Made by a program: the position numbers and the translations under genes
NCBI RefSeq assembly: GCF_048593235.1
Contig: NC_133619.1
Span: 642,484,558-642,548,557 of the forward strand
Length of the DNA stretch: 64,000 bases
Direction of reading: 5' to 3'
From: Sminthopsis crassicaudata
Taxonomy: Eukaryota
The notes under the pieces: model-generated
Seen by the model: the letters and a program-made list of their open reading frames with translations, nothing else
What the model was told of the DNA's origin: nothing
Databases searched by the model: none
Shown: positions 36,791 through 64,000 of the stretch, piece after piece
Layout of the letters: the number at the start of each line of letters is the position of its first letter
Position numbering within the stretch: the first letter of the stretch is position 1

Positions 36791-37779
36791 TTTAAAACTT
36801 TGTATGATATAAGTGCATCTTCAAATTGGCACATATAAAAATCACTGATCTTATTAACCTTTGGCATTTCAAAAACACTTTAAAGTTATCAGGTATGGAA
36901 CAGTTACCTTCAATTAGGGAAATAATAATGGTGATGATGATGTAGCGCTTACCCATGCCCACTGCTGTATTCCGTAGGCCAGATGCCTATATTATTTTGA
37001 TCTCACAATAGCCATTTTTTTTTTCTCTTTATAAATCAGTAAACTAGGGCAAACAGATAAAACAACTTGCCATAAGTCACACAGCTAATATCTTTCTGCA
37101 TCTGGAGTAGAGAAGGCTGCCTGGGTGCTGGCGTTCCCGTTCCTGGGGGGATGGGGCAGTGTGTGTGTGTTCCACTATGCTGGGGCTGCTGCCCTCCCCC
37201 CCTTCCACTAGCTGGGGCACTTCTCCAGCACCTTGTTTTGTTTAGGCATTTGGGGTTAAGTGACTTGTCCAGGGTCACACAACCAGGGAGTGTTGTGTCA
37301 CATTTGGTCCTCCTGACTTTAGGGCTGATGCTCTATCCACTGCACCGACTGGCTGCCCCCCCTCCCCCATTTTCTTAAGCTGATCTGAGCAAAAAAGGTT
37401 GTAATGGCCTGGTTAGCAACCCCCACAATGCCTCCCCACCCATGATTCTCCAAGCTTTCAACATCTACCTGAGACTTTATATAAAAGGGACCATTTTTGC
37501 CCAACCAGGATAAAAGCTGAAAAGTCGAGGCTCGATTCTGGGCTTTCCTCAGTGCCCTCCAACAATGGAGCCATTAATCTTCTCAGATATGTTTAAAACT
37601 TAAAAACAAGCCATAAGATGAATGCCAACACTGTGCAGAGAGGTTCCTCGGAACTTTCTAAGCTGTTTGGGAAGGGAGAGAGCTTCAGGAATCACCCCCC
37701 GCAATTCCCAAATGACTCTTTGCCCTTAGGAGGGAAATTCCGAATTCGAGTTCAGGCTCCCACCCCTGCAGCTGGATCC

Positions 37780-38850: not shown

Positions 38851-40052
38851 GCCAGGTAAAAGTCGGGGAGTTGAATGCTGTGCCCTGAGAGGAGGCTGCC
38901 GAGGCTCTGAGAGGAGGGAGCCCCTGGGCCTTGTCCCTGTGCCCCCCGCGGGTGGGGTCTTTGGAAGAGCCCTGCTTTGGGGGCATGCCCCTCTGGGGCA
39001 CCCGGCCCACTCCCTGCAGGCCCCCCACGTGCTGCTGGGGGGAGGGGCCGCTCCCGTTAAGGGCCCTGGGGAGGCAGAAGAGGGGTTACCTGGAGCAGCG
39101 GCCGGGGTCTCCCCGCTGGGGCCTCTGGAAACCAGGGGCCTTTCATGTGGGCCCTGAACGTGGGAGTTTGGGACGGAGGGATGAGCCTGGGGCTCCAGAG
39201 GAGGAGACCCCCAGAACGGCTCGGTCGGAGTGGATGAGCAGAGAGGCAGGTGGAGCGAAGGCCAGCACTGGCGGCCAAAGCTTTTTATTTTCAAAATATA
39301 CACGCGGATGATCTCATCATTGATCCTACTAAACCTTGTGTTCTCCTCCCCCCCCCCCCCATGGGGGTAACTGATCCCTTCCTCTATGCACACAAGCGCA
39401 GGCATCCCGCTGCGCGAGGAAAAAAAGAAAGCAGGCGGGACAAACTACAAGAGCGGGTTGTGCCCAGACCCGCGGCTCTGTCTGGCACCCATGGCTCCCT
39501 CCAGCACAGGACCCCCATCACCTCATCGTGCATCTGGCCGTGGCCATGGCACTGACCTAATTCTTCCGATTCTAATAAAAAAACTATTTGCAGTGACCCC
39601 TTTTGGAACACTCAGCGGCCGGGACTAGTTAGACGCTTGGTTCCAGGGTGCCCCCGCCCCCCTGGAGTGGTCACAGTCCCAGCGCTTGTGTGTCTCCTCC
39701 AGGCCCAACGGCTAGCAGGATTAGTTAGAATTGATTAGACACCTACTGTTTGTACTGGGGATCCAAAGAAAGGGGGGCTTGCAGCCAAGTCTCGGGGTGG
39801 GGACCACTTGCAAACTGTTCGTGCAAAGTCGGAGGAACTGGAGGCAGGAAGCCCAGGCGAGATTTGCAGCGGGTCCCTGGGATGGGCTCCTCAGCCTTGG
39901 GTGCCCGTGGCAGGCGGGACGGGGAGAACGGGCGGCATCCGGCTCCTTGCGTGCCAGTAACCTTTCTGTCTTTTTCACAGAGAAGGAGTAGGCGGCGAGG
40001 CCCCGGGAACCGGTGAGGAGAGGAGAGAGTGCAGGCTCTCCGGGCCAACGGA

Positions 40053-41651
40053 ATGGAGAAGGGGCCTGGCCCCAGGGCGCCAGGGAAGAGACTGCTCGGG
40101 GGCCCCAAGAGAGACCGGAAATCGATCACCCTGCACGTCAAGCTGGAAGTGCTGAGGCGCTTTGAGGAGGGGGAGAAGCTCACGCAGATCGCCAAGGCCC
40201 TGGGGCTGGCCACCTCCACCGTGGCTTCCATCCGGGTCAACCGAGAGAAGATCAGAGCCAATTCCCAGGCCGCCACGCCCCTCAGCGCCACCCAGCTGAC
40301 CCGCTGCCGCGGCGTGGTGATGGGCAACATGGAGCGGCTGCTGAGCCTGTGGATCGAGGACCAGAAGCAGCAGCAGCTGCCCATCAACACCATGCTCATC
40401 CAGGAGAAAGCCAAGAGCCTGTTCGAGGCCCTCAAGCAGGAGCACGGGGAGAGCGCCCAGGCGGAGACCTTCGGAGCCAGCAACGGCTGGTTTGCCCGGT
40501 TCAAGGCTCGGCACAACGTGCTCCTGACCGACGAGCCCGCCGTGGCGGACACGGAGGCGGCGCGCAGGTACCCGGACACGCTGAGAAAGATCATAGCCGA
40601 CGGCGGGTACACCCCGCAGCAGGTCTTCAACGTCGACGAGACGGGGCTCTTTTGGAAGCGCTTGCCCGAAAGGACGTTTGTGTCTCTGGAGGACCGAGCC
40701 GGGCCGGGCTTCAAGGCCTCCAAGGACCACCTGACCCTGCTCCTTGGAGGCAACGCCGCCGGGGACTGCAAGCTGAAGCCTCTGCTGGTGTACCCCTCGG
40801 AGAACCCGCGGGCCCTGAAGGGCTGCTCCAAGCCCAGCCTGCCCGTGATCTGGAGGTCCAACCGCAACGACTGGGTGACCATGAGCATCTTCCAGGAGTG
40901 GTTCACCAATTTCTTCTGCCCCGCCGTGGAGAGGCACTGTGCCGAGAACCAGCTGCCCCACAAGGCCCTGCTGATCCTGGACAGCGCCCCGTGCCATCCG
41001 GCCCACCTGGACGACCTCTCCGCCAACGTCAGGGTGGAGTTTCTGCCCAAAAACACGTCAGCCTTGATCCAGCCCATGAATCAGGGGGTGATCGCCACCT
41101 TCAAGGCCTTTTACCTGAAGAGGACGCTCTGTCAGCTGCTCCACGAGACCAACGGGGACGAGAAGCCCAGCATCCGGGAGTTCTGGCGCAGCTACAACAT
41201 CATGACGGCCGTGGACAACATCGCCGAGTCCTGGCAGGAGCTCAAGCCGGCGACCATGAACGCCGTGTGGAGGAAGATCTGGCCCGAGTGCGTGCGCGCC
41301 TCCTCCGAGGCCGAGGCTCAGATCCAGCAGAGCGTGGTCGCGTTTGCCGGCCACGGCGCCTTCGGTGCGGCGGCGGAAGATGACGTGGTCCGCCTGCTCC
41401 GGTCCCACGGGGGAGACCCGTCCCGGGGGGGCCGAGAGGAGGAGCCGCTGGGCGCACCCTTCCCGGGATCCCCCCCGGAACTGACTACCAAGCACTTGGC
41501 AGAAGCCCTCTCCCACTTCGACCGGGGGCTGCAGATCCTCGCTGAAAACGACCCCAATCGGGAGCGGAGCCTGAAGGTGCGTCGGGGGGTGAATGGCGCG
41601 ATCAGCTGCTATCGGGAGCTGTACAGGGAGAAGAAACGGGGCGTGAAGTAG
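40053..41651 (+). CDS. Domesticated Tigger/pogo transposase-derived protein (CENPBD1/TIGD1-like), copy A, 532 aa, single coding exon
   Basis: CENP-B-type HTH domains (KRDRKSITLHVKLEVLRRF; GASNGWFARFKARH) and a DDE_1 domain (FNVDETGLFW; LLILDSAPCH; IQPMNQGVI). Acceptor at 39980/39981, AATAAA at 41958, intact frame with GC-rich third positions, no TIRs seen. Confidence 0.92.
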   Translation: MEKGPGPRAPGKRLLGGPKRDRKSITLHVKLEVLRRFEEGEKLTQIAKALGLATSTVASIRVNREKIRANSQAATPLSATQLTRCRGVVMGNMERLLSLWIEDQKQQQLPINTMLIQEKAKSLFEALKQEHGESAQAETFGASNGWFARFKARHNVLLTDEPAVADTEAARRYPDTLRKIIADGGYTPQQVFNVDETGLFWKRLPERTFVSLEDRAGPGFKASKDHLTLLLGGNAAGDCKLKPLLVYPSENPRALKGCSKPSLPVIWRSNRNDWVTMSIFQEWFTNFFCPAVERHCAENQLPHKALLILDSAPCHPAHLDDLSANVRVEFLPKNTSALIQPMNQGVIATFKAFYLKRTLCQLLHETNGDEKPSIREFWRSYNIMTAVDNIAESWQELKPATMNAVWRKIWPECVRASSEAEAQIQQSVVAFAGHGAFGAAAEDDVVRLLRSHGGDPSRGGREEEPLGAPFPGSPPELTTKHLAEALSHFDRGLQILAENDPNRERSLKVRRGVNGAISCYRELYREKKRGVK

Positions 41652-48059: not shown

Positions 48060-49230
48060 AGTGTGTGTCCAAGTCGAGCTTTCTGCATGCGCCCACGTGC
48101 ATGCACACACACATGCGCACACACAGAGCAATGCACACACATGCACATACCAATGCGTGCACAGTGTACATATACATGTACGCATGCACAGCAATGCACA
48201 CACTATACATATATATACCCACATACACATGCGCACACACAGAGCAATGCACACACATGCACATACCAATGCGTGCACAGTGTACATATACATGTATGCA
48301 TGCACAGCAATGCACACACTATACATATATATACCCACATACACATGCGCACATATACAGCAAGGCACACACATGAACATACCAATGCGTGCACAGTGTA
48401 CATATACATGTACGCATGCACAGCAATGCACACAGTATACATATATATACCCACATACACATGCGCACACACAGAGCAATGCACACACATGCACATACCA
48501 ATGTGTGCACAGTGTACATATACATGTATGCATGCACAGCAATGCACACACTATACATATATATACCCACATACACATGCGCACACATACAGCAAGGCAC
48601 ACACATGAACATACCAATACGTGCACATGCAGTGTACATACACATGCCCACATGCACAGCAATGCACACAATATACATACACATGTGCACACAGACAGCA
48701 GTGCATACACATGCACATACCAATACATGCACACACAGTGTACATACACATACCCACATGCACACACACACAGCAATGCACACAGTATACATATACATGT
48801 GCACACATAAAGCAATGCACACACATGCACATACCAATACGTGCACACACAGTGTACATACAGATACTCACATACACGCACACACAGCAATGCACACAGT
48901 ATACACACATACACATGTGCGCACACAGCAATGCACACATGCACATACCAATACATGCACACAGAGTGTACATACACATACCCACATGCACACACAAATG
49001 CGCAGTGTACATACATGCACCCATGTGCTTGCACATGCACATAGCAATGTACACATAACATTGTAATACATGCACATGCACACACACAAAAGGCACACAT
49101 GTGCATATCCCTACACAGAGACACATGTGTTCAATGCATGCACACAGCAATGCACAAAGCACACATATGCATGGGTACAGCAATGCATACATGTGTGCAC
49201 ACATCACACAATACACATGTACATGCACAC
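48060..49230. repeat. Alternating purine-pyrimidine (CA/TA-rich) compound repeat, 116-bp unit with alternating variants
   Basis: agagcaat/acagcaag anchors at 48125, 48241, 48357, 48473 and 48589, degenerating towards 49230. Confidence 0.9.
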
Positions 49231-50669
49231 TGTCTCTGCTGAAAGCAGGGACTGTCCCACGTGTGTCTTTGGATGTCTCTTCGGTGCTTGGCCCAAAGCC
49301 AGCAGGTACTGAAAGGCTTTTTCTGTCATCCATTTGCAGCCTTTTATGCCTCTGACCATACACACACCCTGGTCCCTTCTGACGGCTTGCTGTAATCTCC
49401 ATCCCCCTGACCCTTCTCCTTGCCTGGCTCCACCCTTCATGCCCAGTACCTTATGTAACCCCACTCCAAAGCTCTCCCTCCATCCCCCAGACATCCTCAA
49501 TCTCCTGCCTTCAGGACTTCCTGTCACAGGGAAATCCAAGGGGAAACACCTTGATTGATCTCCAGAAATGGGCAGTGTGGCAGGGTACAGGCACACTGGA
49601 TGTCTGCACTTGGACCCCCATTCCCATGAGAGCGTGAGCTCCCTGCATGTATTCCCAGTGCTTAACAGGTCCTGACTCTAACCCTAAATGCACGCCTGGC
49701 GTATAGCATGGATCCCTAATTCATGCTTCCCTCACTACTAGTCCTGGCGTGCAGAGTTGGCCATGGTCATTGCCCAAGGGCCACCAGCCTGCCAAAGAGC
49801 CTCTCTGTACCTGATGGATGGACGGCGTCGGCTGCAGGGCCAGTGTGGCTACTGCACCGACATGTGCCCTTTGAGATCCCGAGGTTCCCTCTGTACCCTT
49901 TGGTCCCCCAACATAGAACCAGGGAGGAATTCCATCATCAAGGAAATGGATGCTAGTGTAGGAACCCAGCTTGCACTTGGATCCAGAAGGCAACCAGTGA
50001 TGTGGTTGGTCTTTGGATCCTCACTCCTAAGCCCCCACTGGTGTGCTGCTTATAAACAGTCAACCAGGAGGCGCAACTCTGTAAAACCATGACGGGCAGG
50101 CTCTGGCATCTGAAGGGAGAGTGGGTTCAGACTTACCCTTAAGCTGAGGAGCTCCAGGGATGACCAAAGCAAGTCCTTACTCTGGCACGGTGGAGCCTGG
50201 GAGGCCGACTTCCGCTTGCCTGCCGCTGCTGGGGTTCTCTTGAATCCAGAGCCGGGCCTAGCCCCTTGCAGCTGCTTCCAACCCCACGTGACTTGTGTGT
50301 CCCCCAAGTGTCCTGGCTGGTGGGGTGGGAGGGAATTCTGGGTCTCTGCACTAAGAGACCAGCAGAGCTCTATTCCCTGACAGAACTTGCCTCTGGGGTG
50401 CTTTTTGGTTTCTAGGATCTTTTCGGTCTTGCTCCACTCCTTGTGACCCCGTTTGGGGTTTTCTTGATGATTGGCCATTTCCTCCTCCCTCTCCTTTTGC
50501 AGATGAGGAAACTGAGGCAAACCGGGACCCAGTTTGCCCAGCTCGCATTGAACTTCCGGACTCCAAGCCCAAGGAAGCTCTGCACAAAGTTCTGCGCTGG
50601 GGGTCACTTGGCAGGTGGACAATATGGGGGGAGGGCCGAGTAGCCGAAGTCAGGGCAGGAGGCCATCCC

Positions 50670-51400
50670 TTCAAGCCGAACTACATCTCCCATCAGTCAC
50701 TGGGCCCGAGCGGCACACACACGCTGTGGCCTCCCAACTTAAAAATGCGTTGCCATAGAGACGAGTCATGGGGCGAGGACAAAGCTCCCGGAAGTGACGC
50801 GAGGGATCGGAAGTGCCCGATCCTCCGGTCCGGGGCGCGGGGTCACTGTCCGTTCGCGACGGCGGCGGACCTCCGTGCGACGTCTCCGGAGGCGGTGAGT
50901 CCAGTGTCGGGACCTGGGGAGGCTGGGCCTGACAGCGGGGCCAGGAAGGGGCCCAAGTAGCGGAGGTCTCCGTGGAGGCCGCTGGGAATTGGAGTCCTGA
51001 GGGTGATGCCCTCCCCCGGGTTGGTTCTCACACCAGGTGAGGGCGGGGGAGGAGGAGGTCCTAGGACCCTGGGAGCCGGGGGCGTGACGTCACCTCCGGC
51101 ACCAGGGCCTCTGCTCGCGCGCCCCCTGGCGCCGGAAGGCGCTTTAGACTCTTATTCAGCCCTAGCCTCGCTCCCCACGTGGCCGCCAGGTGGCGCCAGT
51201 CGGCACCCAGCCCTATCTAGGTGCCAGTCTAAGCACCCATTGTCCTGGACCTGAGAACCCCAAGAGGTCTCCTGACTGTGGGGTCGCTGTGCGGAGCGTC
51301 CCCTCCTGCCCCCGCCCTCGGGAGGTGAGGGCAGCCAGGAGAAGCGCCGGTCCGGCGTTGGCGGCCGCCGTCCCTGGGTTTCCGGGCTCCCGGATCCCAT
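50670..51400 (+). promoter_or_regulatory. CpG-island promoter and non-coding exon 1 of the SCAN-domain gene
   Basis: ACTACATCTCCCA (ZNF143/THAP11-like) near 50680, tandem ETS CGGAAGTG near 50789 and 50808, strong donor gtgagt at 50895. Confidence 0.7.
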
Positions 51401-53709
51401 TTGGGGTTTCTTTGGCAAAGGGACTGCAGGGTTGGCCATCTCCTTCCCGAGCCCAGCTTACAGATGAGGAAACTGAGGCAAATGGGGTGGGTGACTGGCC
51501 CGGGATCTCCCAGCTGAGGCGCCTCTGAGGGAGGGGCCCCTGGGGGCGCTGGGCAGGCGCTTAATAAATGTACAGAGCTTGAATGGGAGGAGAGGGCTGA
51601 GGCGGGAGGGGGGCCCCTGAGCACCCCCGCCCCAGTGGCCGATGGGAAACGATGAGGTGCTTGTCCTGGGGCAGACCCCCCATGGAGGAGTGGGGGGTAT
51701 CAGCAGAGGACGGCCCAGGTTTGGGGAGGGGAGGGCACTGTGGAGGAGGAAGCTTCTGAAGACCTGAGGCTGCCTGGGAAAAAGAAGCCCCACCCGGTGG
51801 TTCAGGTCCTCACATTCGGGAGCCGCGATGAAGCACCTAGTGTGTGCCCGGCGCGTCCACAAGCATTAAGTGCCGGCTCCTGGTACAGTCTGTCCACAAG
51901 TGTTTCCTAAAAGCATCCGCTTTGTGCCAGCTTCTAGGGTTACAAATACACTGTGTTCTCAAGAAGCAGAAACAATTAGACATTTGGCCCAAGGGCCTCC
52001 TTTCCTCCGCAATTAACACCCAGAAAACCCGGGTCCGGCCCCAGGCAGCACCACGGAGCCCCGGGTTACAGCGCGAGCGCTGCGGCTCGGCTCCCTCGCC
52101 TCGCAGCGCTTTCCACGGATGTCCTCACGGATAGCGAGACTGGTGCACGCAGTGCCAGAGCTAGCTCAGCGTTTGGGAGCCTCCGAAGGGAAGGGCGGGA
52201 GAGCAGAGGGATGAGACTGACCGCCCGACGGAAGAGCTACGGAAACCTGGCGCCGAGAAATCGCTTTGCTTCGTTTGAATGGTCTTGGCCGCAGATCGCC
52301 TGGCAGGAGAAGGTGACCCCCGCCGAGGTCCTTTCCTGCACAAACCGCCAAGCGTCCCACCTCCCTGCACAGCTCCCAGCCCCTCCCCCCCACACTGTGC
52401 CAAAGGCGATTATTTCCTGAAGAACTGGCACGTGGCGAGCACTCACAGGGTGGTCAGGAAAAGTGCGCAAGGACACTCTCAAGGGCTCTCTGAAGAACCT
52501 TAGGATCGATTGTGTGTCGTGGCGGGCCCTTGCCTGAGAAGGTGCCAGGCAGAAGAGCAAAGCAGAAGTGGAGCTGCACAGTAGAACGGCAGATGCACCA
52601 AGTTAGAGAAGCCAGCCGAATGTCTGTAAGGACTATTTGTGGGCGACCTGTGGCAGAGCATCCCCGGCTCTTACGGTCTGATTAGCCAGTCAGACCCTGT
52701 GGACCTCGACCCCGACACTGTGCTGTCATTTCGGTCCGGATCCTGATGTAGCGGTGCCATCTTTGTCCTCTTCGAGAGTGGCCTTTGATAAATGCAAACA
52801 AGAATTAGTTTGGCAGGAGGTTTAGAAAAGAAGTGTGTAGTAAATAAATGCAAATAATGACCTAGGACGAGAGGGCGTTCTAGATGGGGGTCATTGAATT
52901 CAGTTCCCTCCCATACAGCTGAGGAGATTCATGGACCTCCACCATCCAAGGCATTATTTGAATCCTGCCACAGAGTTAGGGAGAAAAACACTTCTCAAAC
53001 TTTTTAGTCCCTGGGTCCCTTTACACTCTTAAATAAAATTGAGGACTCTCCCTCAAAGAGCATTTGTTTGTGTGGGTTATGTCTGTCAGTATTGTAATTT
53101 TATGTATTACTCTCAAAATGGTTTGATCTCAAGGGTCTCAGAGACCCGTGTAGGCCCCAGCACTGAGGCACAAACACTTGGCGGGGGGATTCTGGAGGAA
53201 GAGAGATTCTTTGAGCTGGAGGTGAGGAGGGAAGGCTTTGCAGCATAGGCGTGGAGGTGGTCGAGGAGCCCTCTGTGTGTGAGGAGTGAGAAGGGTAGGA
53301 TGGGGAGGGAAGGCAGGAGGCTCAGGGGAGTGATTCGAATCAGTGGGAGCTTCTGGAAAATCACTTGGAAATCACTGGGCATTTATGAAATGCCTGCCTC
53401 GTGCCGGGCATTGCCAACCTTTGCTTTCAAGGACAGCACAAAATGCAGCTCAAAGCAGGGAGACGAGTCGGGAGGCTTTGGCAGAAATCCCAGAGAGGCT
53501 CCGAGGCCCGATGTGGCCTCTCAGGGGATGGAGAGTGGGGCTGTTACTAGAGTTCCAGAGTGGTGGGAGGGGACGAAAGGGAGAGGCCCTAGAGCCTCGA
53601 ATGCCAGACCAAACTTCTCTGGGAGGCACTAGGGAGCCAAGGCCCCTCCCTCACCAAGTGGCTGATGTCTGGTTTCTGCTCCCCTAGGCAGAATCCTGAG
53701 CCTTGGACC

Positions 53710-54115
53710 ATGGCTGTGGCCCCACACCCTCAGGGTCCCATTCCACAGGAGGAGGATGGGCTTCTGATTGTGAAGATCGAGGAGGAGGAAGGGAACCCTT
53801 GGGAGTCGCAGCTCCTCACGCAGAGGGCTGGAGAGACCCCCGAGCTGGTGGACCACCATCAGCGTTTCCGCGCTTTCCACTACCAGGAGGCAGCAGGGCC
53901 CCGTGAGGCGCTGAGCCGGCTCCGCGAGCTCTGCCACCAATGGCTGAGGCCAGAAATACGCACTAAGGAGCAGATTGTGGAGCTGCTTATTCTAGAGCAG
54001 TTCCTGAGCATTCTACCCCCGGAGACCAGGCCGTGGGTGGAGGCCCAGTGCCCTGGGAGTGGGGAGGAGGCTGTGGCCTTGGTGGAGGACTTGGCCCACA
54101 TGTTTCCTCACAGTG
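53710..54115 (+). CDS. SCAN-domain first coding exon (ZSCAN/ZKSCAN type)
   Basis: MAVAPHPQG...[13 protein letters not shown]...[51 protein letters not shown]...[12 protein letters not shown]. Acceptor at 53687/53688, strong Kozak accATGg, donor gtgagc at 54116 (phase 1). Confidence 0.93.
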
Positions 54116-55559
54116 GTGAGCACAGCTGGGCAGGGGAAGGCTAGGAGAAGGTGTGACGGGTGCCAGGACCTGCCAGGATCCTGCCTGGGAGCCCCGGCTC
54201 TTGGACTCATGCTGTGACTTGCATCCTGTTGGGGTTAGATCAGGGCTCACATCTCCCCTCAGATACCTGCTAGCTGGGGACCCTTTTAGCTTAGCTTCCT
54301 CAGCTATGAAATGGAATAATAGCATCCACCTCACGGGACAGGGGAGGATGGAGTCAGGCTGCATCAGAGTTAGCTATTTATCCTCGCCACCATCTTCATT
54401 GCCCTTCTTCTCCCTTTCCTCCTCCCCTCCTTCTCTTCTCTTCCTCTTCTTTTTCTCATTTTCTCCCTCATCCCCTCTTTCTTCCCCTTACCTTCCTCTT
54501 CTCCTTCTTCCTCTTCTGCCCCCTTCCTCCTTCTTTCCAAGGTGCCCCCGAAGGAGTCCCTTAGCTTAGGAAACTATAAGAGAAGAGTCATTGGGATTCA
54601 AGGCCGTGCCCTTGGCAGGAAAGGGAAGAGGACAAGTGCTTATTAGACGCCTGTTCTGGGCCAGGCACTTGACCAAGCTGATCCCTTGGGGTGGAAGCAA
54701 ATCACTTCAGAGCCTCCGATCCCATAAGGTGGACCTGCTTGGAGACCGGACCTGCAGGAAAGCCGCCGGCCTCCGTCCCTTGGAAAGCTCGTGCATTCTG
54801 GGTCTGGGCAGGATTCCTTCAACCCCAGCCTGCAGTGCAGCATTTCTGGAGACAGGGAACGTGTTACCTCACAGGGCTAGAAAGCTCAGCCTGCCTCTTC
54901 CTCCCTCCCCCTTGTGGCATTCACTGTATCAGAGCCTGGCTCTGTCCACTAGCAGCACCTCCTTTCCATAGTGGGGGTTCATTATGTCCAGAGCCTCTGG
55001 TTGTATTGGGGTCCGTGAGCATTTATGAGTCCTCATGGTGGACAGAGACCCAGGAACTTCTGCTTGAGCATCTCCAGGGATGGGGTAATGGTTAGGGTTC
55101 ACTCCCCCTCCCCCGCATTGGCCCTAGTTTGGCCCTCTGGGGTCAGACAGCACATTCCTCTCTCCCCCTCAGTGTGATTCTGCCTCTGACTCTGTCTCAC
55201 TTTTGCCTGCAGTGGGGCTATTGGGAGCCCATCTATGGTATAACAGGGAAGCCATTCAGTTCTAGAGGTGGATGGATCCCAAGGTCTTGTCTGCCAGTCC
55301 CCTGCATCAGCGTCCTCCAGGGAAGTGGGCTACAGGAAGATGTCTGCAGGCCGTTTCCATCCCAAAGCAGTCTTTGGACGAACTGCCACCTCTCCCTTCC
55401 GAACAAGGGGCGTCAATGCCCCCTCTGCCCTTCCCTCCTTCAGAGAGTGGGGCTCCAGAGCCAATGTCTCCTTTGTAGGGGAGTTCGGTGGACCTCCTTT
55501 GGCTCTGCCCATCTCTTGCCCCTGGAGACTGTGCTCAAGGTGGATGACCAGCTTGCTCA

Positions 55560-56830
55560 GGGTCCAGCTCTCTCTTCTCCTGCCATATTAATTCACTTGA
55601 GAATCTTGTTCTCTCATGTGGATTTCATGACAGTTTTTATTCTGAGGATTCTCAGATCTACTCATCCTGCCCCAATCTCTTTTAACCTCAATCTCTCATC
55701 TGCAGTGGCCATTCACAGGTCTCTACCTGGATGTCCAGTAGACATCTTAAACTCATCATGTCTAAAACCAAATTCATTATCCTACCCCCAAACTCTTTCT
55801 CCTCCCACTTTCTTTGGCACTACAGAGAGCACCCCCATCCTCCAAGGCCCTTAGGATCCCAGCCTAAGAATCTCCCTAGACTCCTTGGTCTCTCACATTT
55901 CATATATAATATGGCACCATAGTCCATCATCTCACCTCTGCAGTATCTCTGGTCCATTTCACCTCTGTATCACCTCTGGTCCATTTCACCTCTGCAGCAT
56001 CTCTGGTCCATTTCACCTCTGGTCCATTTCACCTCTGTATCACCTCTAGTCCATTTCACCTCTGCAGTATCTCTGGTCCATTTCACCTCTGGTCCATTTC
56101 ACCTCTGTATCACCTCTGGTCCATTTCACCTCTGCAGCATCTCTGGTCCATTTCACCTCTGTACCATCTCTGCATCATCTTTGCACCATCTCTCAAATAT
56201 GCTCCCTTATCTCTCCTGACACTGTCCCCACTCTGGCACACACCCTTGTCTTCTCAGGCTTAGTTGGTGGTCTCCCTGCCTTGGGCATCTCCCCATTTCG
56301 CTCCTTCTTCCAATCACCAAAGGAATTTTTTTTACAGTGTAGGTTTGACCATTTTAGTTCCCCACTAAATAACCTCCAGTATCTTCCTCTCACTTGCAGG
56401 AGCAAAGACAAAATGCTCTATTTGTCATTCAAAGCCCTTCATCACCTGCCCTCTCACCTTTCCATGACATTTCACTTTTTGGCACATTCTTTTCCATCCC
56501 GTGTCCCTGGTCTCCTCGCTGTCCCATGAGCACTTCTTTAGCCAACCCCAGGCCTATAATGCTGTCCTCCTCTGTTCTGACCACTGGCCTTCCCAGATTC
56601 TTTGAAGTTTCAACTAAAACTCCACCTTCTGCAGCCTTCCCCCATGGCTCTTAGGTTCAGAGCCTTGCCTGTTCATTATTTCCTATTTGACCTTTATATA
56701 TAGTTGTGTGTATGTTGTTTCCTTCATTAGACTGTGAGCTCCTTGAGGGCAGGGACTATTTTTTGCCTTTCTTTTATATCTTAAATGCTTAGCACTGTGC
56801 CTGGCATTGAGTAGGTGCTTAATTTGTGCA
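55560..56830 (+). mobile_element. LINE-2 3' region with an internal short tandem repeat (about 55935-56170)
   Basis: ctctacctggatgtcc...catcttaaactc...atgtctaaaacc; terminal gtaggtgcttaat; repeated ctctggtccatttcac. Confidence 0.7.
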
Positions 56831-57389
56831 TGCTGACTTGACTCATGTGACCTTGGCCGAGTCCCTTTACAGCTTTTGGCTGCTTCAGTTATTTCTATCA
56901 CATGAGGGAGACATACATGATGCCTTCTGAGATTCCATTGATCTTGGGGAGTCTTAGCCCAATTCTGTTTTAATAACTCTTCATTTAGCCAGTGCCAGGT
57001 GCATAGAAGGAGCTTGCTCATTATTTGATCTCATCTGTGTTGTATGTAAACAGTGTAGATGGATAGAGAACAAGTCCTGGCTGTGGGCAGTGGGGCTCTG
57101 GGCAGTTCCCACCGCTCTCCAGGCTCAGGGGAATGTTCTGAGACCCTGAATTATTGATGGAACAGCTACACTACTCCCAGCAGTGAAATCACTGGTCTGG
57201 GCAAGAATATGCCAGGTACCCAGTGGAATGGCCTCCCGTCTCCCAAGGAATTTAGGAAAGTGCACTGAGTCTGAAGTCGGAAGACCCTTCTCCCTAACCC
57301 ATTTCCTAACCTGTAAAATGAGTTTCCTCCCAGGTCTTTCTAAATCAGAGATCCTTTGGTGCCATTATATTCCCCTGTGAGATACCGTG

Positions 57390-57845
57390 TGGATACACAC
57401 ACAATACAGTACACATATGAACACCCCCACATAATACGCACATGCACAAGGTCATGCAGTGCCCACATGCATGCACACACATACACGGTGCACCTACATG
57501 CCATACACACATGTGATCCCGCAATTCAGCACAGAGGTATACACGTGACCACACACAGCACAACAAGGTCATGCAGTGCACACATGCATGCACATGTACA
57601 TGGTGTGCGTATATGCCATGCACCCATACATGTAAACACACACCAAGCACAGAGATGTACACCTACATACTATACAATGCACAACAGGCTTACATAATAC
57701 AACACAGGTGCACCTTCACAGTACAAATGTATACACAATGTACATGTGTACACATACAACACACAGGTGTGTGCCTACACATATACATGTGTGTACAGTA
57801 CAATGCATGTATACATACATGTAAAACATGCCCACAAGCAGACAC
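57390..57845. repeat. Degenerate (CA/TA)n-rich tract
   Basis: Nearly continuous purine-pyrimidine alternation. Confidence 0.85.
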
Positions 57846-59160
57846 AGGAGGGGAAAGCTCCTTGAACGCAAGGACCAGCCAGTGCAGCATGCACGAGGGG
57901 CCTCTCCCATCAGCCCATCTCTCCCCACCTCACTGTCCCCCATCAGGCTGGAGTTGCTGCTTTTTGTTTTTGTAAGCCAAGGGTTTGGTCACAGTAAGTG
58001 CTTAATAAATGTTTTTTGGCTCGACCTGGGGGTCAAACAAGGATTCTGAAGAGGGAGGGCCATGCCAATTGGGGGGATGGCCCAGCAAAGCGGGGAGATG
58101 GGAAGTGGAATGGGACAGTTTGGGCCCGGGAACATATGAAGGGTTTGCTGGGCAGTAGGCATAGACTAGAGAGAGCTTTAAATGGAGCCCTGAGAGTCCG
58201 GTCCGGATTGGAGTGGGGAGGGCCGTGGGGATGGACAGCAGTGCCTGAAACGGTGTCGGGGCAGCTGGGGAGTTGGGCTTGGTTGTGAGTCAGTAAGGGT
58301 GGTCGGGGGTGGAGGCTGAAGATGCCGGCAAGGGAACCTTCCCTCCAAACTGAACATCAAATGTGAGGGGGGGCAGGATGCCCCCTCCTCCGGGCCCCTG
58401 AGACCTAAGAGATGGGATGCTACTCGATGAGGAAACAGGCTTGCTCCTTCCCTAATCTCGGCCTCCATTAAAGGGGCAGAGGTCCTACACAGGGCTGGGA
58501 TTGATCAGGCTTACTTTTCCTTGTTCCAGACACCTCAGAGATAGGTGCTTCCAGCGGCTGAGCTCTGCCTTCCTCTCCCCTCCCCACTTTTCTACCTTCT
58601 CCCTCCTCTCCCCCCTTCTTTCCCCCTTCCCTCTCCTCCCTTCCCCTTCTTTCCCCTCCCCCTCTTTTTCTTCTTCCTCTCTTCTTCCTCCCTTCTCTCA
58701 TCCTTCCCCCCTTTCTCCCTCCTCTTCTCTCTTCCCCACTCCAGGGAGGCCTAGGACAGACCTTGGCCCCCGAGGGCTGGTTCGGGCCAAGACGTTGGCC
58801 CCAGTCAGAAGCTGGGTCTGCTCTGGTTGTATTGGAGGCAAGGAAGACCGAGGAAATGAGTGCCACTGGAGCCAGGCAGGCAGAGAGGGGGATGAGAGTG
58901 GGGAGTCACAGAAAGCAGCCCCTCAGGCCATGGGATTTCCCACAGGGAAGGTGGCCCTTGGACCTGGGCTAGGGCTGACCATTGGGCTTGGCTGCCTTGA
59001 AACGGTGGGGATATCCAGGGTGGGTCTGGATAGGGAGAAATGGCAGTGACCAGAGCGCACAGGCAATGGGGGGCCAAAACGGCTGCAACCAGCCCCCCGA
59101 ATCGCAGCTGGGCCATCTAACAGCTCCCATCTCCTCCCCACCCCCCAGCTCTGCTTTCAG

Positions 59161-59234
59161 CCCAGGTTCCCGCCCATCCTGCAGATATGGGGAGCCTCAG
59201 AGACCAGGAAGCCAAGCTCTCTGACAAATGCCAG
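59161..59234 (+). CDS. Putative 74-nt linker exon of the SCAN gene (AQVPAHPADMGSLRDQEAKLSDKCQ)
   Basis: Polypyrimidine tract plus CAG acceptor, consensus CAG|GTGAGT donor, phase 1 in and phase 0 out. The peptide resembles ZKSCAN inter-domain exons. Confidence 0.65.
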
Positions 59235-59811
59235 GTGAGTGCTGCTTCCCTCTCTGCAGCCTCAGCCCGTTTCCTCTTACCTGAACGAACCAAACCACAG
59301 GTTCTGAAAAGCCCAAGGGATCACGTCCATTGGATGCAGCAAACCTAGAATGCTGGGAAAACCCAGGAGGTTCCTCAGGCGAGGGAGGGGACCAAGCTTC
59401 TGGGCCCAGGGCCCCTGGAGCAGAGCCAGAGAAGCCCAGGGGCCGTGGGTCAGGGCCCCCAGAGTATGGACCAGATGAGTGCACAAGGACCGTGGGTCAG
59501 GGCCAGAGCCAGGGCAGCGCAGACCTCGGGGTCTTTGGCTCTTGTAGACCCTCCGGCCTGTCGGCACCTGCCCTGGGCACCCTCCATCCCCTGGTGGTCT
59601 GGGCAGATGTGTCTGTGTGAGGCGGCATGTTAGCGAATGCCTGGGCATCTGGGATTTACAGGAGGTCTGACCTCTTAGCCCCCATGCGCCCCCTTTCCTT
59701 CCTCTACTGTGTGCCAGGCACCATGCTGAGCCCCGAGAATACAAGTCAAAGCAGAGAGGAAAGGGCTGGGGGGAGATGAAGGGGGTGGACTCAGGGCTGG
59801 AGAGGCTTTCG

Positions 59812-59838
59812 GGGTTAGGGTTAGGGTTAGGGTTAGGG
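59812..59838 (+). repeat. Short interstitial telomeric repeat (GGGTTA)4GGG
   Basis: Read directly from the sequence. Confidence 0.85.
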
Positions 59839-62800
59839 TTCAGTTTTAGCCCAGAGAGTTTGGGATTGGGGGATGAGTATTTCTTGGTGCTGGTGGGACA
59901 CAGAAGAGGCCACAGGAGGCCTCGATCCCCATCCCAGGCCCTGGTGGACCATAAAGTACAAACTCTGCACTCCCCCGGTGGCCCTTCCCCAAGATGGTCG
60001 CTCTCTTCCCCCTGGGGGAGGCCCCACAGTTGGGGGGAGGCCCCTTTAGGCTCTGACATTCCCCTCACCGGGTTGACCATACTTTGAGCCAAGTTGTGTG
60101 TGTGTGTTGGGGGGGGGTCATCCCTCCTTTCCGTATGCAGGGAGTCAGGTCCCCGTCCTCCAGGGCTCTGTCCTCCCCACTCCCATTGTCCCCTCCCTTC
60201 CTCTTTCCCTGTTCTACACCCAGTACTCTCCTTTTCATACCTGAGTCCCTACGAGCTTCTCTGGAAGCTTTGCAGGGACCGCAGGCTCAGCTCTCCATCT
60301 GGGGGGTCTCTGTTGGCACTGGGAGGGCCCCCTTTTTGGCCTCCTCTCGGCCATCACCCCGACCCTCTCAGCTGTGATATCCCCACAAGGCAGAAGCTTC
60401 CAGGTCTTGTGGGAGCTCCTTTCAGGAGGGGATCAGGAGACTTTGTTCTGGCTTTGTTTTACCCTCTTCTGGTTCTAATAGATCCAAACCTTTCTTTAAC
60501 CATGTTTTCCAGGGACTCTGGGGTTTCCTTAGTTGGTCTTTCCTTGCTCTGGGTAGCAAATCCCTGTGCTATCTGATTTGTGGATGCCATTTGGAGAAGG
60601 CCCTAGTCTTCCCCATTCTTCCTTCTGGAAGCTTGAGTAATTTATCTCTTGCTCCCTTCCACATATTAAGGTCTTATGCAAAAAGACATGATTTTCTTTG
60701 GGTTTCTGCTCCGAGTTGGCAGGGGTTGCTGTTTCTTTCCCAGTTGGACCCGGGGCGTCTCTAGGCTAACAACAATTCTTTGTGACACTCGGTCCCTGCT
60801 TTGGGTCATTCATCTCTCGGGCTTTGTGCCAGGGTCAGGCTCCGTCCCTTGCCATTTGTGCTGGTCGGTGCTGTTTAGTCGGGGTCGCCTCCTCCTCCTC
60901 TGGCCCCCCCTGCTTTGAGGATTGGATCCTTCTGAGGACAGAGTGCTAGGGATCTCAGAAGCAACCAGAGCTGCTGCTCTGAGAATTTTCTGACGATCAG
61001 GGCCTGATTCCTAGACTGTGGGGGTTTCTAGCCTCTCCAGGAACTCTGAAAGGCCTTGGCAGGAGACTCTGGCCGGATTTTTTGGTGGGATTCTGGGCTG
61101 GGACTTAGCGGAGTCTCAGGAAATCAGAGGCAAGCATGGTTGGGGCAAGCGTCTTGCTAGAGCCGTTATATGGGCAACAAGTGGCCAGCCTCTGTTCCAA
61201 TAGCTGCCCTGGAGTCAGCCCAGTCTTCTGACCCATAGAGATCTTTGAGAAGCTCAACTGAGCTACACAGTGTGTTAGTTTTTCCCCAAGCAGGTCATGA
61301 AGTCACTGATGAAAACCCCAAGGAAAGGGGTTTGTTCTATGAGGTAGTGAGCTCCCTATTTCCAGAAACTTTCAAGGAAGAGCTTAATGACCATTGGGTA
61401 GGGTTCCTGCAGAGAGGGTTCCTCCCCGAATTATGGATCCCTGGGGTCCCTTCCACTCTGGGGTTAGGGGGATCTGGAAATTCTAGTTCAAGGTAGGATT
61501 GGTTTCCTGGAAGTTTTTGAAAGGCAGATGTCCATGTTTCCTCCCTTGACCTCTCCAGAAAGCTAGAACCATTTCCCTGGCCTCCTTAACAAAACCCTTC
61601 CCATGTCTATCTGTACTCTTCGGTTCAGCCAGCAGAGGCAATGTGCTCTCCTGGACACGGGTCAGTTCTTCCCCCACATAGCATTGGGCGTCTCTTCCCT
61701 TGTGGCTGGACTCCCTTCCAGGCGGCTCTCCTACCCTGCCTCCATCCTGTCACCCCCTGCTTGGAGTCTGCTCTGATTTCTTTGGGTTGGGAGAGCAGGG
61801 AGCTGGGTCTGTCCACCACGGGCACAGTCTGTCCTTCCCTGTCCTTTTGGCTGAAGGCATCATCAGATCTGGGCTCACCAGCTGTTTATTAATGCCCTGA
61901 TCTCCCATTTTCCCAGATGCCATTGCAAAGGTGGGAAAAGTGCCCTGGGTGGGGAACCCGCTGTCTGCCCTTTGCCTGGTCTCAGAGATAATCTTCCTCC
62001 TGCTGCCTCTCTCTGGCCCCAAGGGACCCCATTGATGCCCTGCCCCCGAGGGAGTTGGGCCTTGGGCCACAGAACCAGAACAGTTAGGGCCAAAAGTACT
62101 GCCCTTCCTCTATGAAAAGCCCGTTTTATCTTAGAGAGATTCTCCTTCCGCTGGGGAGGGGGTCCAGCATTCCCTCCCTTTCAAGGGAGGGAAGACTCCC
62201 CAGAGAGTTGGAGGAAGGCTGGAGCCTGTCCTTCGTGGAGGGAGGTTGTCAAGATACCAGTTTCAATCTGAATTTAGGGAAAATGTTCTCACTTTGCTCA
62301 CTTTCCCACCAGGGAATAGGTCACCTTTGAGGGTGATGGGTTGCCTAGTCAGAGAGTCCCCACCCCCAGGCTTAGACCAGCCCTTCTCAGGGAGCTTCAA
62401 GTGGGGATTCCTTCACTGGAGGGCGGGGGCTGCTGTTGGCTGAGGCCGCAGGCCTGTGCATAGTAGGGCTTTCCACCGGCAGAGCACTGATTTAGTCAGA
62501 TTTGGATTGACCAAATAGCAGCTGTGTGGCCCTACTTGTAAGATGAGAGGGGCAACGGGGGCCCCTGAGATCCCACCTTAGTTCATTCCTAGGCTCGTGC
62601 CAACCATGAAAAAGTATTTCCCGAATGAATGAAGAATGGATGACTTGGGGGGGGGGGGCAGATCAAAGAGCTCGAGTCGGGCCCCTACCATTTTTAATCT
62701 CGTTGCTTGTTAAAGATTCCTTACGAGGCCGCTTTTTATTCCCGGCCAGCCCTGTAGAAGGTCCCGTAAGGAGTCCGGCCCTCTCACAGGAAGCAGAATT

Positions 62801-63053
62801 GGCAAACTGTTTTTCAGAGAGTTGAAGGAAAAGCCCCAGCCCACCCCCATCCTGTTTGGTGCAAGACTTTCCAAAAGGTTTGCTGCATTTTGAAGTGTGA
62901 CTTTCAACTCCCACAGGAAGGTCGTAGGAAATTAAAACTGGGTAGAAATGTACTTAAGGCCATCTGTGGCCCGTTACGTTCTTCTGTTTAAGAGACTTCT
63001 CCCAAGCCCCTCAGAACTTGAGATCAATAAATGCTTGTCTCCCCATTTTGCAG

Positions 63054-64000
63054 CGGGTCAGAGATGGGGCAGTCCTGGGCAAAGGGAGGGGAAAGAACTA
63101 TTCAGTTGAGCCCCTAAGAGATGTTGACATGGACCAGGCCTCCCTGCGGGCCAAGAGGTCCCTGAGTGAGATCGACAGCCGGAGGACCAAGAGAGACCGC
63201 AAGGCCATTAATTTACACGTTAAGCTGGAAGTGCTGCGCCGCTTCGCCGCGGGAGAGAAGCTCAGCCGCATCGCCAAGGCCATGGGCCTCTCCACCTCCA
63301 CCGTGGCCACCATTCGAGACAACCGGGAAAAGATCCAGGCCAGCTCTCTGGCTGCCACGCCACAGGTGGCCACCAAGCTAACCAGGAGCCGGAGCTTGGT
63401 GATGGAGAACATGGAGCGGCTCCTGAGCGTCTGGATCGAGGACCAGAACCAGCGTGGTGTGCCGGTCAACGTCTCCACCATCCAGGTCAAGGCCAAGAGC
63501 CTATTCCAGGACCTGAAGCGGGAGCAGGGCCAGAGCGCCGAGGCCGAGACCTTCGGAGCCAGCCGAGGCTGGTTCACCAGGTTCAAAGCCCGCCACAGCC
63601 TGCCCAACCTGGGCACGAGCAGCGAAACCATCAGCACGGATCCAGAAGCTGCAGCAAAGTACCCGGAGGCCCTGAGGAAGGTCATCCAGGAGGGGGGCTA
63701 CACGCCCCAACAGGTGTTCAACGTGGACGAGATGGGACTCTTCTGGAAGCGCCTGCCAGACAGGACCTTCATCTCGGTGGAGGAGAAAACCACGTCCGGC
63801 TTTAAGGCGGCCAGAGACCTCCTGACCCTCCTCCTGGGGGGCAACGCCGCGGGCGACTTCAAGCTTAAGCCGCTGCTGGTCTACCATTCCGAGAGCCCCC
63901 GCGCCCTTAAGGGCTTCTCCAAGCCCAACCTGCCCGTGATCTGGCGCTCCCACAAGAAGGCCTGGGTGACCATGAGCCTCTTCCAGGAGTGGTTCGTGCA
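63054..64000 (+). CDS. Tigger/pogo transposase-derived exon, copy B (CENPBD1/TIGD1-like). Internal ATG at 63129; cut off by the window edge; predicted terminal exon of a SCAN-transposase fusion
   Basis: Hand translation, no stop from 63054 to 64000: RVRDGAVLGK...DVDMDQASLRAKR...KRDRKAINLHVKLEVLRRFAAGEKL...GASRGWFTRFKARH...FNVDEMGLFWKRLP...LLGGNAAGDFKLKPLLVY. Acceptor ccccattttgcag at 63053. The ORF track misses it because no stop falls inside the window. Confidence 0.9.

What the first reader, a model, noticed from the sequence alone, without database searches (positions are those of the whole stretch)
53688..64000. Predicted SCAN-pogo/Tigger transposase fusion gene
Seen in the sequence: a CpG promoter with non-coding exon 1 (donor 50895); a SCAN exon with a strong ATG (53710-54115, 406 nt, phase 1); a 74-nt exon with consensus splice sites (59161-59234, phase 1 to 0); and an acceptor at 63053/63054 followed by 25 stop-free codons in frame with the transposase ATG at 63129. 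The first two exons total 480 nt, or 160 codons, so direct splicing gives SCAN + linker + CENP-B HTH + DDE in one frame. No C2H2 exon or recognisable KRAB-A exon lies between them, so the transposase exon sits where a ZSCAN gene has its zinc-finger array. An alternative route (58745-58950, then 59166-59234) also keeps the frame. Established: host-transposase fusions such as PGBD1 (SCAN-piggyBac), SCAND3/ZBED9 and POGK (KRAB-pogo) exist, and SCAN domains mediate dimerisation. Inference: this is a lineage-specific chimeric transcription factor that binds Tigger-TIR-like DNA through its HTH domains. It could recruit KRAB-bearing SCAN partners, and so TRIM28 (encoded about 45 kb away), by heterodimerisation. 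I cannot say whether it has already been catalogued.
Basis: partly seen in the sequence, partly recalled or inferred. Interest (0 to 1): 0.92.

Follow-up and report, generated by a model that had tools for sequence, protein, structure and literature searches.

The report
Known ancient SCAN-Tigger transposase fusion gene
The predicted gene is real: a protein-pairing SCAN domain is spliced onto a tamed, catalytically disabled Tigger transposase. It is not new or lineage-specific, because a published catalogue already lists it for marsupials, and my comparisons show the same gene in whales, moles and sea cows.

Summary
The window carries a CpG promoter and exon 1 (donor 50895), a SCAN exon (ATG 53710, donor 54115), a short linker exon, and an acceptor at 63054 that opens in frame into an intact Tigger1-type transposase ORF running off the window.

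One correction: models in related species use a linker acceptor 12 nt upstream (59149, 86 nt, not 74). The frame is kept either way.

The "lineage-specific" reading fails.
- Gene models in a close dasyurid relative, koala, possum, a whale and a mole have the same intron positions and phases.
- The third acceptor is almost identical between whale and this marsupial.
- Trees of the transposase part and of the SCAN part both group the marsupial and eutherian copies.
- The fusion therefore predates the marsupial-eutherian split.

Both halves are under purifying selection (omega 0.19 for SCAN, 0.07 for transposase, against possum). The third catalytic Asp is Asn (DD32N), so the protein is most likely a DNA-binding factor that pairs through SCAN, not an enzyme.

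Cosby et al. (bioRxiv 2020, Table S3) already list a SCAN-Tigger fusion, TIGD-G8, in koala, Tasmanian devil and wombat. They date it at only 60-80 My. What is new here is the older age and wider spread.

The parts
50500..50895 (+). CpG-island promoter and exon 1. The exon start is not defined. The donor is at 50895. In one isoform model of a close relative the exon-1 ORF from 50745 is coding.
   Evidence: CpG o/e 0.76 and GC 0.64 at 50500-51000. Donor GCG|GTGAGT. The N-terminus of P0039 matches the ORF 50745-50895. There is weak DNA conservation against possum over 50675-51210.
53688..54115 (+). SCAN exon. The acceptor is at 53688 or 53692, the start codon at 53710, and the donor at 54115 in phase 1.
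   Evidence: Pfam SCAN E 5e-40. Splice sites checked. The phase-1 donor G|GTGAGC is the same in possum, mole and whale. Omega is 0.19 against possum.
59149..59234 (+). Linker exon of 86 nt, phase 1 to 0.
   Evidence: Models P0040, P0033 and P0034 include the four extra residues. The exon is 88.7% identical to possum and is the best conserved island in the intron region.
63054..64000 (+). First 947 nt of the terminal exon: a 25-codon lead-in, then a Tigger1-type transposase (two HTH domains and the start of DDE_1). The ORF is still open at the end of the window.
   Evidence: The acceptor and its pyrimidine tract are nearly identical to the whale's. DNA alignment to whale starts 53 nt upstream of the acceptor. 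Omega is 0.07 against possum.
40050..41651 (+). Copy A: a tandem paralogue, intact at 533 codons, Tigger-derived, without SCAN. It is 70% identical to copy B at the protein level.
   Evidence: Pfam DDE_1, HTH_Tnp_Tc5 and CENP-B_N. Comparison with copy B. It belongs to its own clade spanning marsupials and eutherians at 100/100. Its triad is D, D, N. No inverted terminal repeats above chance level.

Best explanation
This is the dasyurid-type orthologue of an old therian host-transposase fusion gene.

Structure: a host CpG promoter and a SCAN exon are spliced, through an 86-nt linker exon, onto the whole coding region of a domesticated Tigger1-type (pogo) transposase. The splice uses an acceptor 75 nt upstream of the transposase-homologous region.

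The gene is one of three therian paralogues that share the loss of the third catalytic Asp:
- CENPBD1;
- 'copy A', which lies 22 kb upstream in this window;
- this SCAN-fused 'copy B'.

Shown here: the architecture, the in-frame splice sites, orthology across marsupials and eutherians, purifying selection on both halves, and the D,D,N triad (seen in the relatives' full-length copies).

Inferred: the protein does not cut DNA. It binds DNA through its two transposase helix-turn-helix domains. It forms homo- or heterodimers with other SCAN proteins, and so acts as a transcription or chromatin factor.

It most probably equals TIGD-G8 in the catalogue of Cosby et al.
For: - Frame and splice sites in the window.
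- Annotated fusion proteins with the same exon order in a near relative (P0040), koala (P0033), possum (P0034), whale (P0053) and mole (P0105).
- Exact exon models: the SCAN exon ends in phase 1 with G|GTGAGC in all four genomes. The linker is 86 nt in marsupials and 80 nt in eutherians. The third acceptor tract is nearly identical in whale and window.
- Careful tree of the transposase part: clade B 100/100, with marsupial and eutherian halves. Clades A and C (CENPBD1) show the same split.
- SCAN tree: marsupial and eutherian fusion SCANs group at 93/90, apart from ZNF274, ZSCAN22 and ZNF446.
- The tandem order copy A then SCAN-B is the same in window, mole and whale.
- Omega against possum: SCAN exon 0.19, transposase 0.07.
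- In whale and mole no Met precedes the first HTH inside the transposase exon. The window's ATG 63129 is Thr in possum and koala. The full DNA-binding domain can therefore only be made from the SCAN start codon.
- Third catalytic residue: Asn in copy A and in marsupial B, Thr in whale B, Ser in mole B. Putatively active Tiggers have Asp.
- Literature: TIGD-G8 is listed as SCAN + Tigger, 'fusion only', with all introns supported by RNA-seq in 2 samples and dN/dS 0.0675.
Against: - The window ends at 64000. The second and third catalytic positions and the stop codon of copy B in this genome were not seen.
- No RNA data for this species were available.
- Equating the gene with TIGD-G8 rests on matching species, domains and dN/dS, not on a checked gene identifier.
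- The linker (omega 0.49, 29 codons) and the 25-codon lead-in (omega 0.74) are only weakly constrained.
- Mole against whale gives omega about 0.37-0.39, so constraint is looser in some eutherians. The mole has also lost the second Asp.
- DNA binding, dimerisation and any regulatory role are inference.
Confidence: 0.85

Rival explanations
1. There are two separate genes: a short SCAN-only gene and an independently expressed domesticated Tigger gene. The fusion models would then be gene-prediction artefacts.
For: Copy A shows that such a transposase gene can stand alone without SCAN. The window's copy B has an ATG at 63129. The linker and the lead-in are weakly constrained.
Against: The acceptor tract and the open frame upstream of the transposase homology are conserved from whale to marsupial. 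ATG 63129 is not conserved, and whale and mole have no Met before the first HTH. The linker exon is the most conserved intronic island. The catalogue reports RNA-seq support for all introns and 'fusion only' transcripts.
Confidence: 0.06
2. This is a young, lineage-specific fusion, as the first reader proposed and as the catalogue's date of 60-80 My for Euaustralidelphia implies. Similar fusions would then have arisen independently in eutherians.
For: Cosby et al. list the marsupial entry (TIGD-G8) and the cetartiodactyl entry (TIGD-G1) as separate events. Cetartiodactyls really do have a second, independent Tigger spliced to the same SCAN exons.
Against: Whale isoform P0053 and mole P0105 carry a transposase of clade B, not the younger element. 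Intron positions and phases are identical and the acceptor is nearly identical. The SCAN domains group together. The tandem order with copy A is the same.
Confidence: 0.05
3. The SCAN exon belongs to an ordinary ZSCAN zinc-finger gene whose C2H2 exon lies beyond the window. The transposase exon would be an intronic passenger that is normally skipped.
For: The window stops inside the transposase exon, so downstream DNA of this genome was not seen.
Against: No C2H2 or KRAB-like motif was found in the 10 kb downstream of the orthologous gene in possum, mole or whale. No annotated orthologue carries zinc-finger Pfam domains. The transposase exon is under strong purifying selection.
Confidence: 0.03

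Closest known systems
TIGD-G8 (SCAN-Tigger host-transposase fusion; Cosby et al., bioRxiv 10.1101/2020.05.07.082677, Table S3)
   Same: The domain set matches: SCAN plus HTH, HTH_Tnp_Tc5 and the DDE core. It is a marsupial gene listed for koala, Sarcophilus and wombat. It is described as 'fusion only' and made by splicing. Its dN/dS of 0.0675 compares with 0.07 for the transposase part here.
   Different: The catalogue dates it to 60-80 My and limits it to Euaustralidelphia. Here, orthologues with the same introns appear in a whale and a mole, and a sea-cow protein falls in the same clade, so the fusion predates the therian split. Identity with the catalogue entry is inferred; the gene ID was not checked.
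CENPBD1 (Tigger-derived domesticated gene; Gao et al. 2020, PMC7386202)
   Same: It is the sister clade of copies A and B in the tree, at 100/98. It has the same domains. The spacing of the last two triad positions is the same (32), and it too has lost the third Asp: DD32G against DD32N. It arose in Theria.
   Different: CENPBD1 has no SCAN exon and lies at a different locus. Gao et al. set the 'TIGD1-like' sequences aside as pseudogene-like with narrow distribution. Copies A and B are annotated under that name, yet they are conserved in marsupials and eutherians.
PGBD1 (KRAB/SCAN-piggyBac) and POGK (KRAB-pogo)
   Same: Both are therian-age fusions in which a host regulatory domain is spliced to a whole transposase, and both are under purifying selection.
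   Different: PGBD1 has a different transposase superfamily. POGK has a different pogo family (Passer) and a KRAB domain in place of SCAN. Both are retained in humans; no primate or rodent orthologue of the present gene appeared among the listed hits.
TIGD-G1 (SCAN-Tigger fusion of Cetartiodactyla; Cosby et al., Table S3)
   Same: It uses the orthologous SCAN and linker exons of this same gene (P0122, P0125, P0126).
   Different: Its transposase is a separate, younger Tigger element sitting in intron 2 (L003 13833-15464). It has an intact D,D,D triad and recognisable inverted terminal repeats, and it falls outside clades A, B and C. It is absent from the window.

Membership tests
Host-transposase fusion gene (as defined by Cosby et al.) | A host domain and transposase domains in one reading frame, joined by splicing | tested here: met
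   The spliced CDS 53710-54115 + 59149-59234 + 63054-64000 is open and aligns end to end with models from five other species.
Host-transposase fusion gene (as defined by Cosby et al.) | Fusion transcripts observed | not testable with these tools
   No RNA data were available here. The literature reports all introns supported in 2 RNA-seq samples for TIGD-G8.
Host-transposase fusion gene (as defined by Cosby et al.) | Purifying selection and syntenic orthologues | tested here: met
   Omega is 0.19 (SCAN) and 0.07 (transposase) against possum. The tandem order with copy A is the same in mole and whale. Orthologue clades appear.
SCAN domain proteins | A SCAN box above the Pfam gathering score | tested here: met
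   PF02023, 135.6 bits against a cut-off of 27, covering model positions 5-85 of 90.
SCAN domain proteins | Homo- or heterodimerisation through SCAN | not testable with these tools
   Inferred from established knowledge of SCAN domains. No interaction data.
pogo/Tigger-derived domesticated genes (TIGD/CENPBD1 group) | CENP-B-type HTH plus HTH_Tnp_Tc5 plus DDE_1 | tested here: met
   Copy B has HTH_23, HTH_Tnp_Tc5 and the start of DDE_1 within the window. Full-length relatives and copy A have all three domains.
pogo/Tigger-derived domesticated genes (TIGD/CENPBD1 group) | Single-copy orthologue without terminal inverted repeats | tested here: inconclusive
   No repeats above chance level flank copy A, nor the B exon in possum and whale. 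The 3' flank of copy B in this genome lies outside the window.
Active Tigger transposon | An intact D,D,D catalytic triad | tested here: not met
   The third position is Asn in copy A and in marsupial B orthologues, Thr in whale B and Ser in mole B. For copy B of this genome, only the first Asp lies inside the window.
ZSCAN / KRAB zinc-finger transcription factors | A C2H2 zinc-finger array, with or without KRAB | tested here: not met
   A motif scan of all six frames of the window and of three orthologous loci, including 10 kb downstream, found none. The orthologues carry no zinc-finger or KRAB Pfam domain.

The most novel reading that the evidence does not exclude
The catalogued marsupial fusion TIGD-G8 may in fact be a therian-wide gene at least about 160 My old. 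On this reading it is one of three paralogues (CENPBD1, copy A, SCAN-fused copy B) descended from a single domestication that had already lost the third catalytic Asp. It would have been overlooked because it appears to be missing from primates and rodents, and because its relatives are labelled 'TIGD1-like' and were set aside as pseudogene-like. In Cetartiodactyla the same SCAN and linker exons later captured a second, still DDD-intact Tigger element in intron 2, which makes this locus a reusable transposase trap.
Probability: 0.65. Interest if true: 0.5.

Novelty: already known. Interest (0 to 1): 0.35.

Why it matters
The gene adds a well-supported case of exon shuffling between a host dimerisation domain and a transposase. 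The analysis here moves its origin back before the marsupial-eutherian split. It also links two catalogue entries (TIGD-G8 and TIGD-G1) to one host gene that captured transposases twice. If the gene is truly absent from human and mouse, it is a conserved mammalian regulator that the main model species cannot reveal.

Tried and rejected
- Exact-sequence look-ups of P0040 and P0033 found no contig. Possum, mole and whale loci were used instead.
- The journal version of Cosby et al. is not held. The preprint table was used.
- An inverted-repeat search around copy A gave only short pairs of 75-93% complementarity, of the kind expected in GC-rich DNA.
It lacks conservation and support from any model, so I do not count it as an exon.
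- The extra upstream acceptor used by model P0040 (near 62917) runs into a stop in this window, so that isoform is not conserved.
- The long overlapping ORFs at 47.7-49.4 kb are a 116-nt CA-rich minisatellite, not a gene.
- The C2H2 and KRAB scans used regular expressions only, so a very degenerate motif could be missed.
- I ran no further search on opossum or monotreme distribution. The age question was already settled by the eutherian orthologues.
Full report
**What is in the window**

The region holds a CpG island. At 50500-51000 the GC content is 0.64 and the CpG observed/expected ratio is 0.76. An exon there ends at the donor 50895|GT.

The SCAN exon has acceptors at 53688 and 53692. Its ATG at 53710 sits in an ACCATGG context. 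It ends at 54115 in phase 1 with G|GTGAGC. Its ORF matches Pfam SCAN at E 5e-40.

A short exon ends at 59234 with CAG|GTGAGT. It has two tandem acceptors 12 nt apart, at 59149 and 59161, and both keep the frame.

The acceptor TTTTGCAG|CGG lies at 63053/63054. It is followed by 25 open codons, then an ATG at 63129. A Tigger-type transposase ORF then runs to the last base of the window. Pfam finds HTH_23, HTH_Tnp_Tc5 and the start of DDE_1 in it.

The window contains no N. It has no C2H2 array, no KRAB-like motif and no second SCAN exon.

A second Tigger-derived ORF, copy A (40050-41651), is intact and lies 22 kb upstream. It is 70% identical to copy B at the protein level.

**Do the exons belong together?**

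A protein search with copy A returned annotated proteins that carry SCAN plus the transposase domains. They come from:
- a very close relative of the window's genome (P0040, with isoforms P0038 and P0039);
- koala (P0033);
- brushtail possum (P0034);
- Rice's whale (P0053);
- a mole (P0105).

The acceptor in use is therefore 59149, and the exon is 86 nt.

P0039 starts in the exon-1 ORF at 50745 and uses the 50895 donor.

P0040 also uses an extra acceptor further upstream of the last exon. In the window that route meets a stop, so it is not conserved.

I solved exact exon models on genomic DNA of possum (L002), mole (L001) and whale (L003):
- In all three, as in the window, the SCAN exon ends in phase 1 with G|GTGAGC.
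- The linker runs from phase 1 to phase 0. It is 86 nt in marsupials and 80 nt in eutherians.
- The last exon starts in phase 0.
- The whale's third acceptor tract differs from the window's at only a few bases.
- Possum has the same tract at 31027, plus the downstream in-frame acceptor that its annotation uses.

DNA alignment of the window to whale begins 53 nt upstream of the acceptor. Against possum, the linker exon is the best conserved island between the SCAN and transposase exons, at 88.7%.

Whale and mole have no Met between the acceptor and the end of the first helix-turn-helix. The window's ATG 63129 is Thr in possum and koala. The complete DNA-binding region can therefore only be translated from the SCAN start codon.

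**Age and relatives**

A careful maximum-likelihood tree of the transposase part gives three clades, each holding marsupials and eutherians:

| Clade | Content | Support |
|---|---|---|
| C | CENPBD1 | 100/99 |
| A | copy A and its orthologues | 100/100 |
| B | SCAN-fused copies of marsupials, whale and mole, plus a sea-cow protein | 100/100 |

A and B are sister clades (100/94).

A tree of SCAN boxes groups the marsupial and eutherian fusion SCANs at 93/90. They sit apart from ZNF274/NRIF, ZSCAN22 and ZNF446.

In mole and whale, copy A lies directly upstream of the fusion gene on the same strand, as it does in the window. A bat gene model runs from copy A into the SCAN exon of clade B.

The fusion therefore predates the marsupial-eutherian split. 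It is not lineage-specific.

No primate or rodent member of clade A or B was among the listed hits. That is only an absence from a truncated list, not a test.

**Selection and catalysis**

Nei-Gojobori estimates for the window against possum:

| Region | Codons | Omega |
|---|---|---|
| SCAN exon | 129 | 0.19 |
| Transposase part | 290 | 0.07 |
| Linker exon | 29 | 0.49 |
| 25-codon lead-in | 25 | 0.74 |

Mole against whale gives about 0.37-0.39 throughout. Copy A, mole against whale, gives 0.15.

At the three catalytic positions, putatively active Tiggers from octopus, sawfish and turtle have D, D, D. The domesticated copies differ at the third position, and in some cases at others:
- All copy A orthologues, the marsupial B copies and the sea-cow B protein have D, D, N, with 32 residues between the last two positions.
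- Whale B has D, D, T.
- Mole B has D, A, S.
- CENPBD1 has G or S at the third position.

This agrees with the DD32G reported for CENPBD1. For copy B of this genome, only the first Asp is inside the window. Loss of a triad Asp is expected to abolish cutting; this rests on established knowledge of DDE/D transposases.

**Mechanism**

Shown here:
- a host promoter and SCAN exon are spliced in frame to a full-length transposase;
- that transposase is conserved and has lost its catalytic triad.

Inferred:
- the two HTH domains bind specific DNA;
- SCAN mediates homo- or heterodimers with other SCAN proteins;
- the retained DDE fold serves a non-catalytic role.

TRIM28 itself lies at about 7.5-11.3 kb on the + strand, with a B-box and a PHD finger. 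An earlier scan note places its C-terminus at 11161-11241.

**Comparison with the literature**

Table S3 of Cosby et al. lists TIGD-G8. Its entry reads: SCAN + Tigger; Euaustralidelphia; 60-80 My; koala, Sarcophilus and wombat; fusion only; all introns supported in 2 RNA-seq samples; dN/dS 0.0675. This fits the present gene, although I could not check the gene IDs.

The same table lists TIGD-G1 (SCAN + Tigger, Cetartiodactyla). The 765-769-residue isoforms of whales, hippo and deer splice the same SCAN and linker exons to a different Tigger element in intron 2. That element is at L003 13833-15464. It has an intact D, D, D triad, lies outside clades A to C, and is flanked by a 25-nt inverted repeat at 88% complementarity. 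This is probably TIGD-G1.

Gao et al. 2020 set 'TIGD1-like' sequences aside as pseudogene-like with narrow distribution. Clades A and B carry that label in the databases, yet they are conserved genes.

**Verdict**

The fusion-gene reading is right. The lineage-specific reading is wrong.

The gene is already catalogued and is annotated in several genomes. This scan's own notes hold nothing earlier on this gene; the only related note concerns TRIM28 in the same window.

Noticed in passing
window 40050-41651 (+): Copy A is an intact 533-codon Tigger-derived gene without SCAN, with a D,D,N triad and GC3 of 0.90. It has its own orthologue clade across marsupials and eutherians, and omega is 0.15 between mole and whale. 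Databases label it 'TIGD1-like', a class that Gao et al. 2020 dismissed as pseudogene-like.
   Followed up: partly
L003 13637-15937 (Rice's whale, intron 2 of the fusion gene): A second, younger Tigger element with an intact D,D,D triad and 25-nt inverted terminal repeats (88% complementary). It is spliced to the same SCAN and linker exons in the 765-769-residue isoforms of whales, hippo and deer, and is probably the catalogue's TIGD-G1. So the same host gene captured a transposase twice.
   Followed up: partly
window 59147-59161: Two tandem acceptors lie 12 nt apart (AG|59149 and AG|59161). Both are in frame and differ by four residues.
   Followed up: partly
L001 2142-2504 (-), mole: The gene upstream of copy A on the opposite strand has a SCAN box that groups with ZNF446 in the SCAN tree. 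This fits an origin of the captured SCAN exon among neighbouring SCAN genes.
   Followed up: partly
window 48104-48996: A CA-rich minisatellite with a 116-nt unit and about 7.8 copies. It explains the long overlapping ORFs on both strands and the strong strand skew there.
   Followed up: yes
window 55928-56172: A tandem repeat with a 27/70-nt unit in intron 1 of the fusion gene. A related array lies on the opposite strand 4 kb downstream of the possum gene (L002 about 36811-36992).
   Followed up: no
window 7561-10447 (+): B-box and PHD-finger exons on the + strand are consistent with TRIM28 lying about 43-46 kb upstream of the SCAN exon.
   Followed up: partly
P0031 (Hipposideros armiger model): This bat gene model joins a copy-A transposase to a C-terminal SCAN box of clade B. 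It looks like a read-through prediction, and it shows that the tandem order is also kept in bats.
   Followed up: partly
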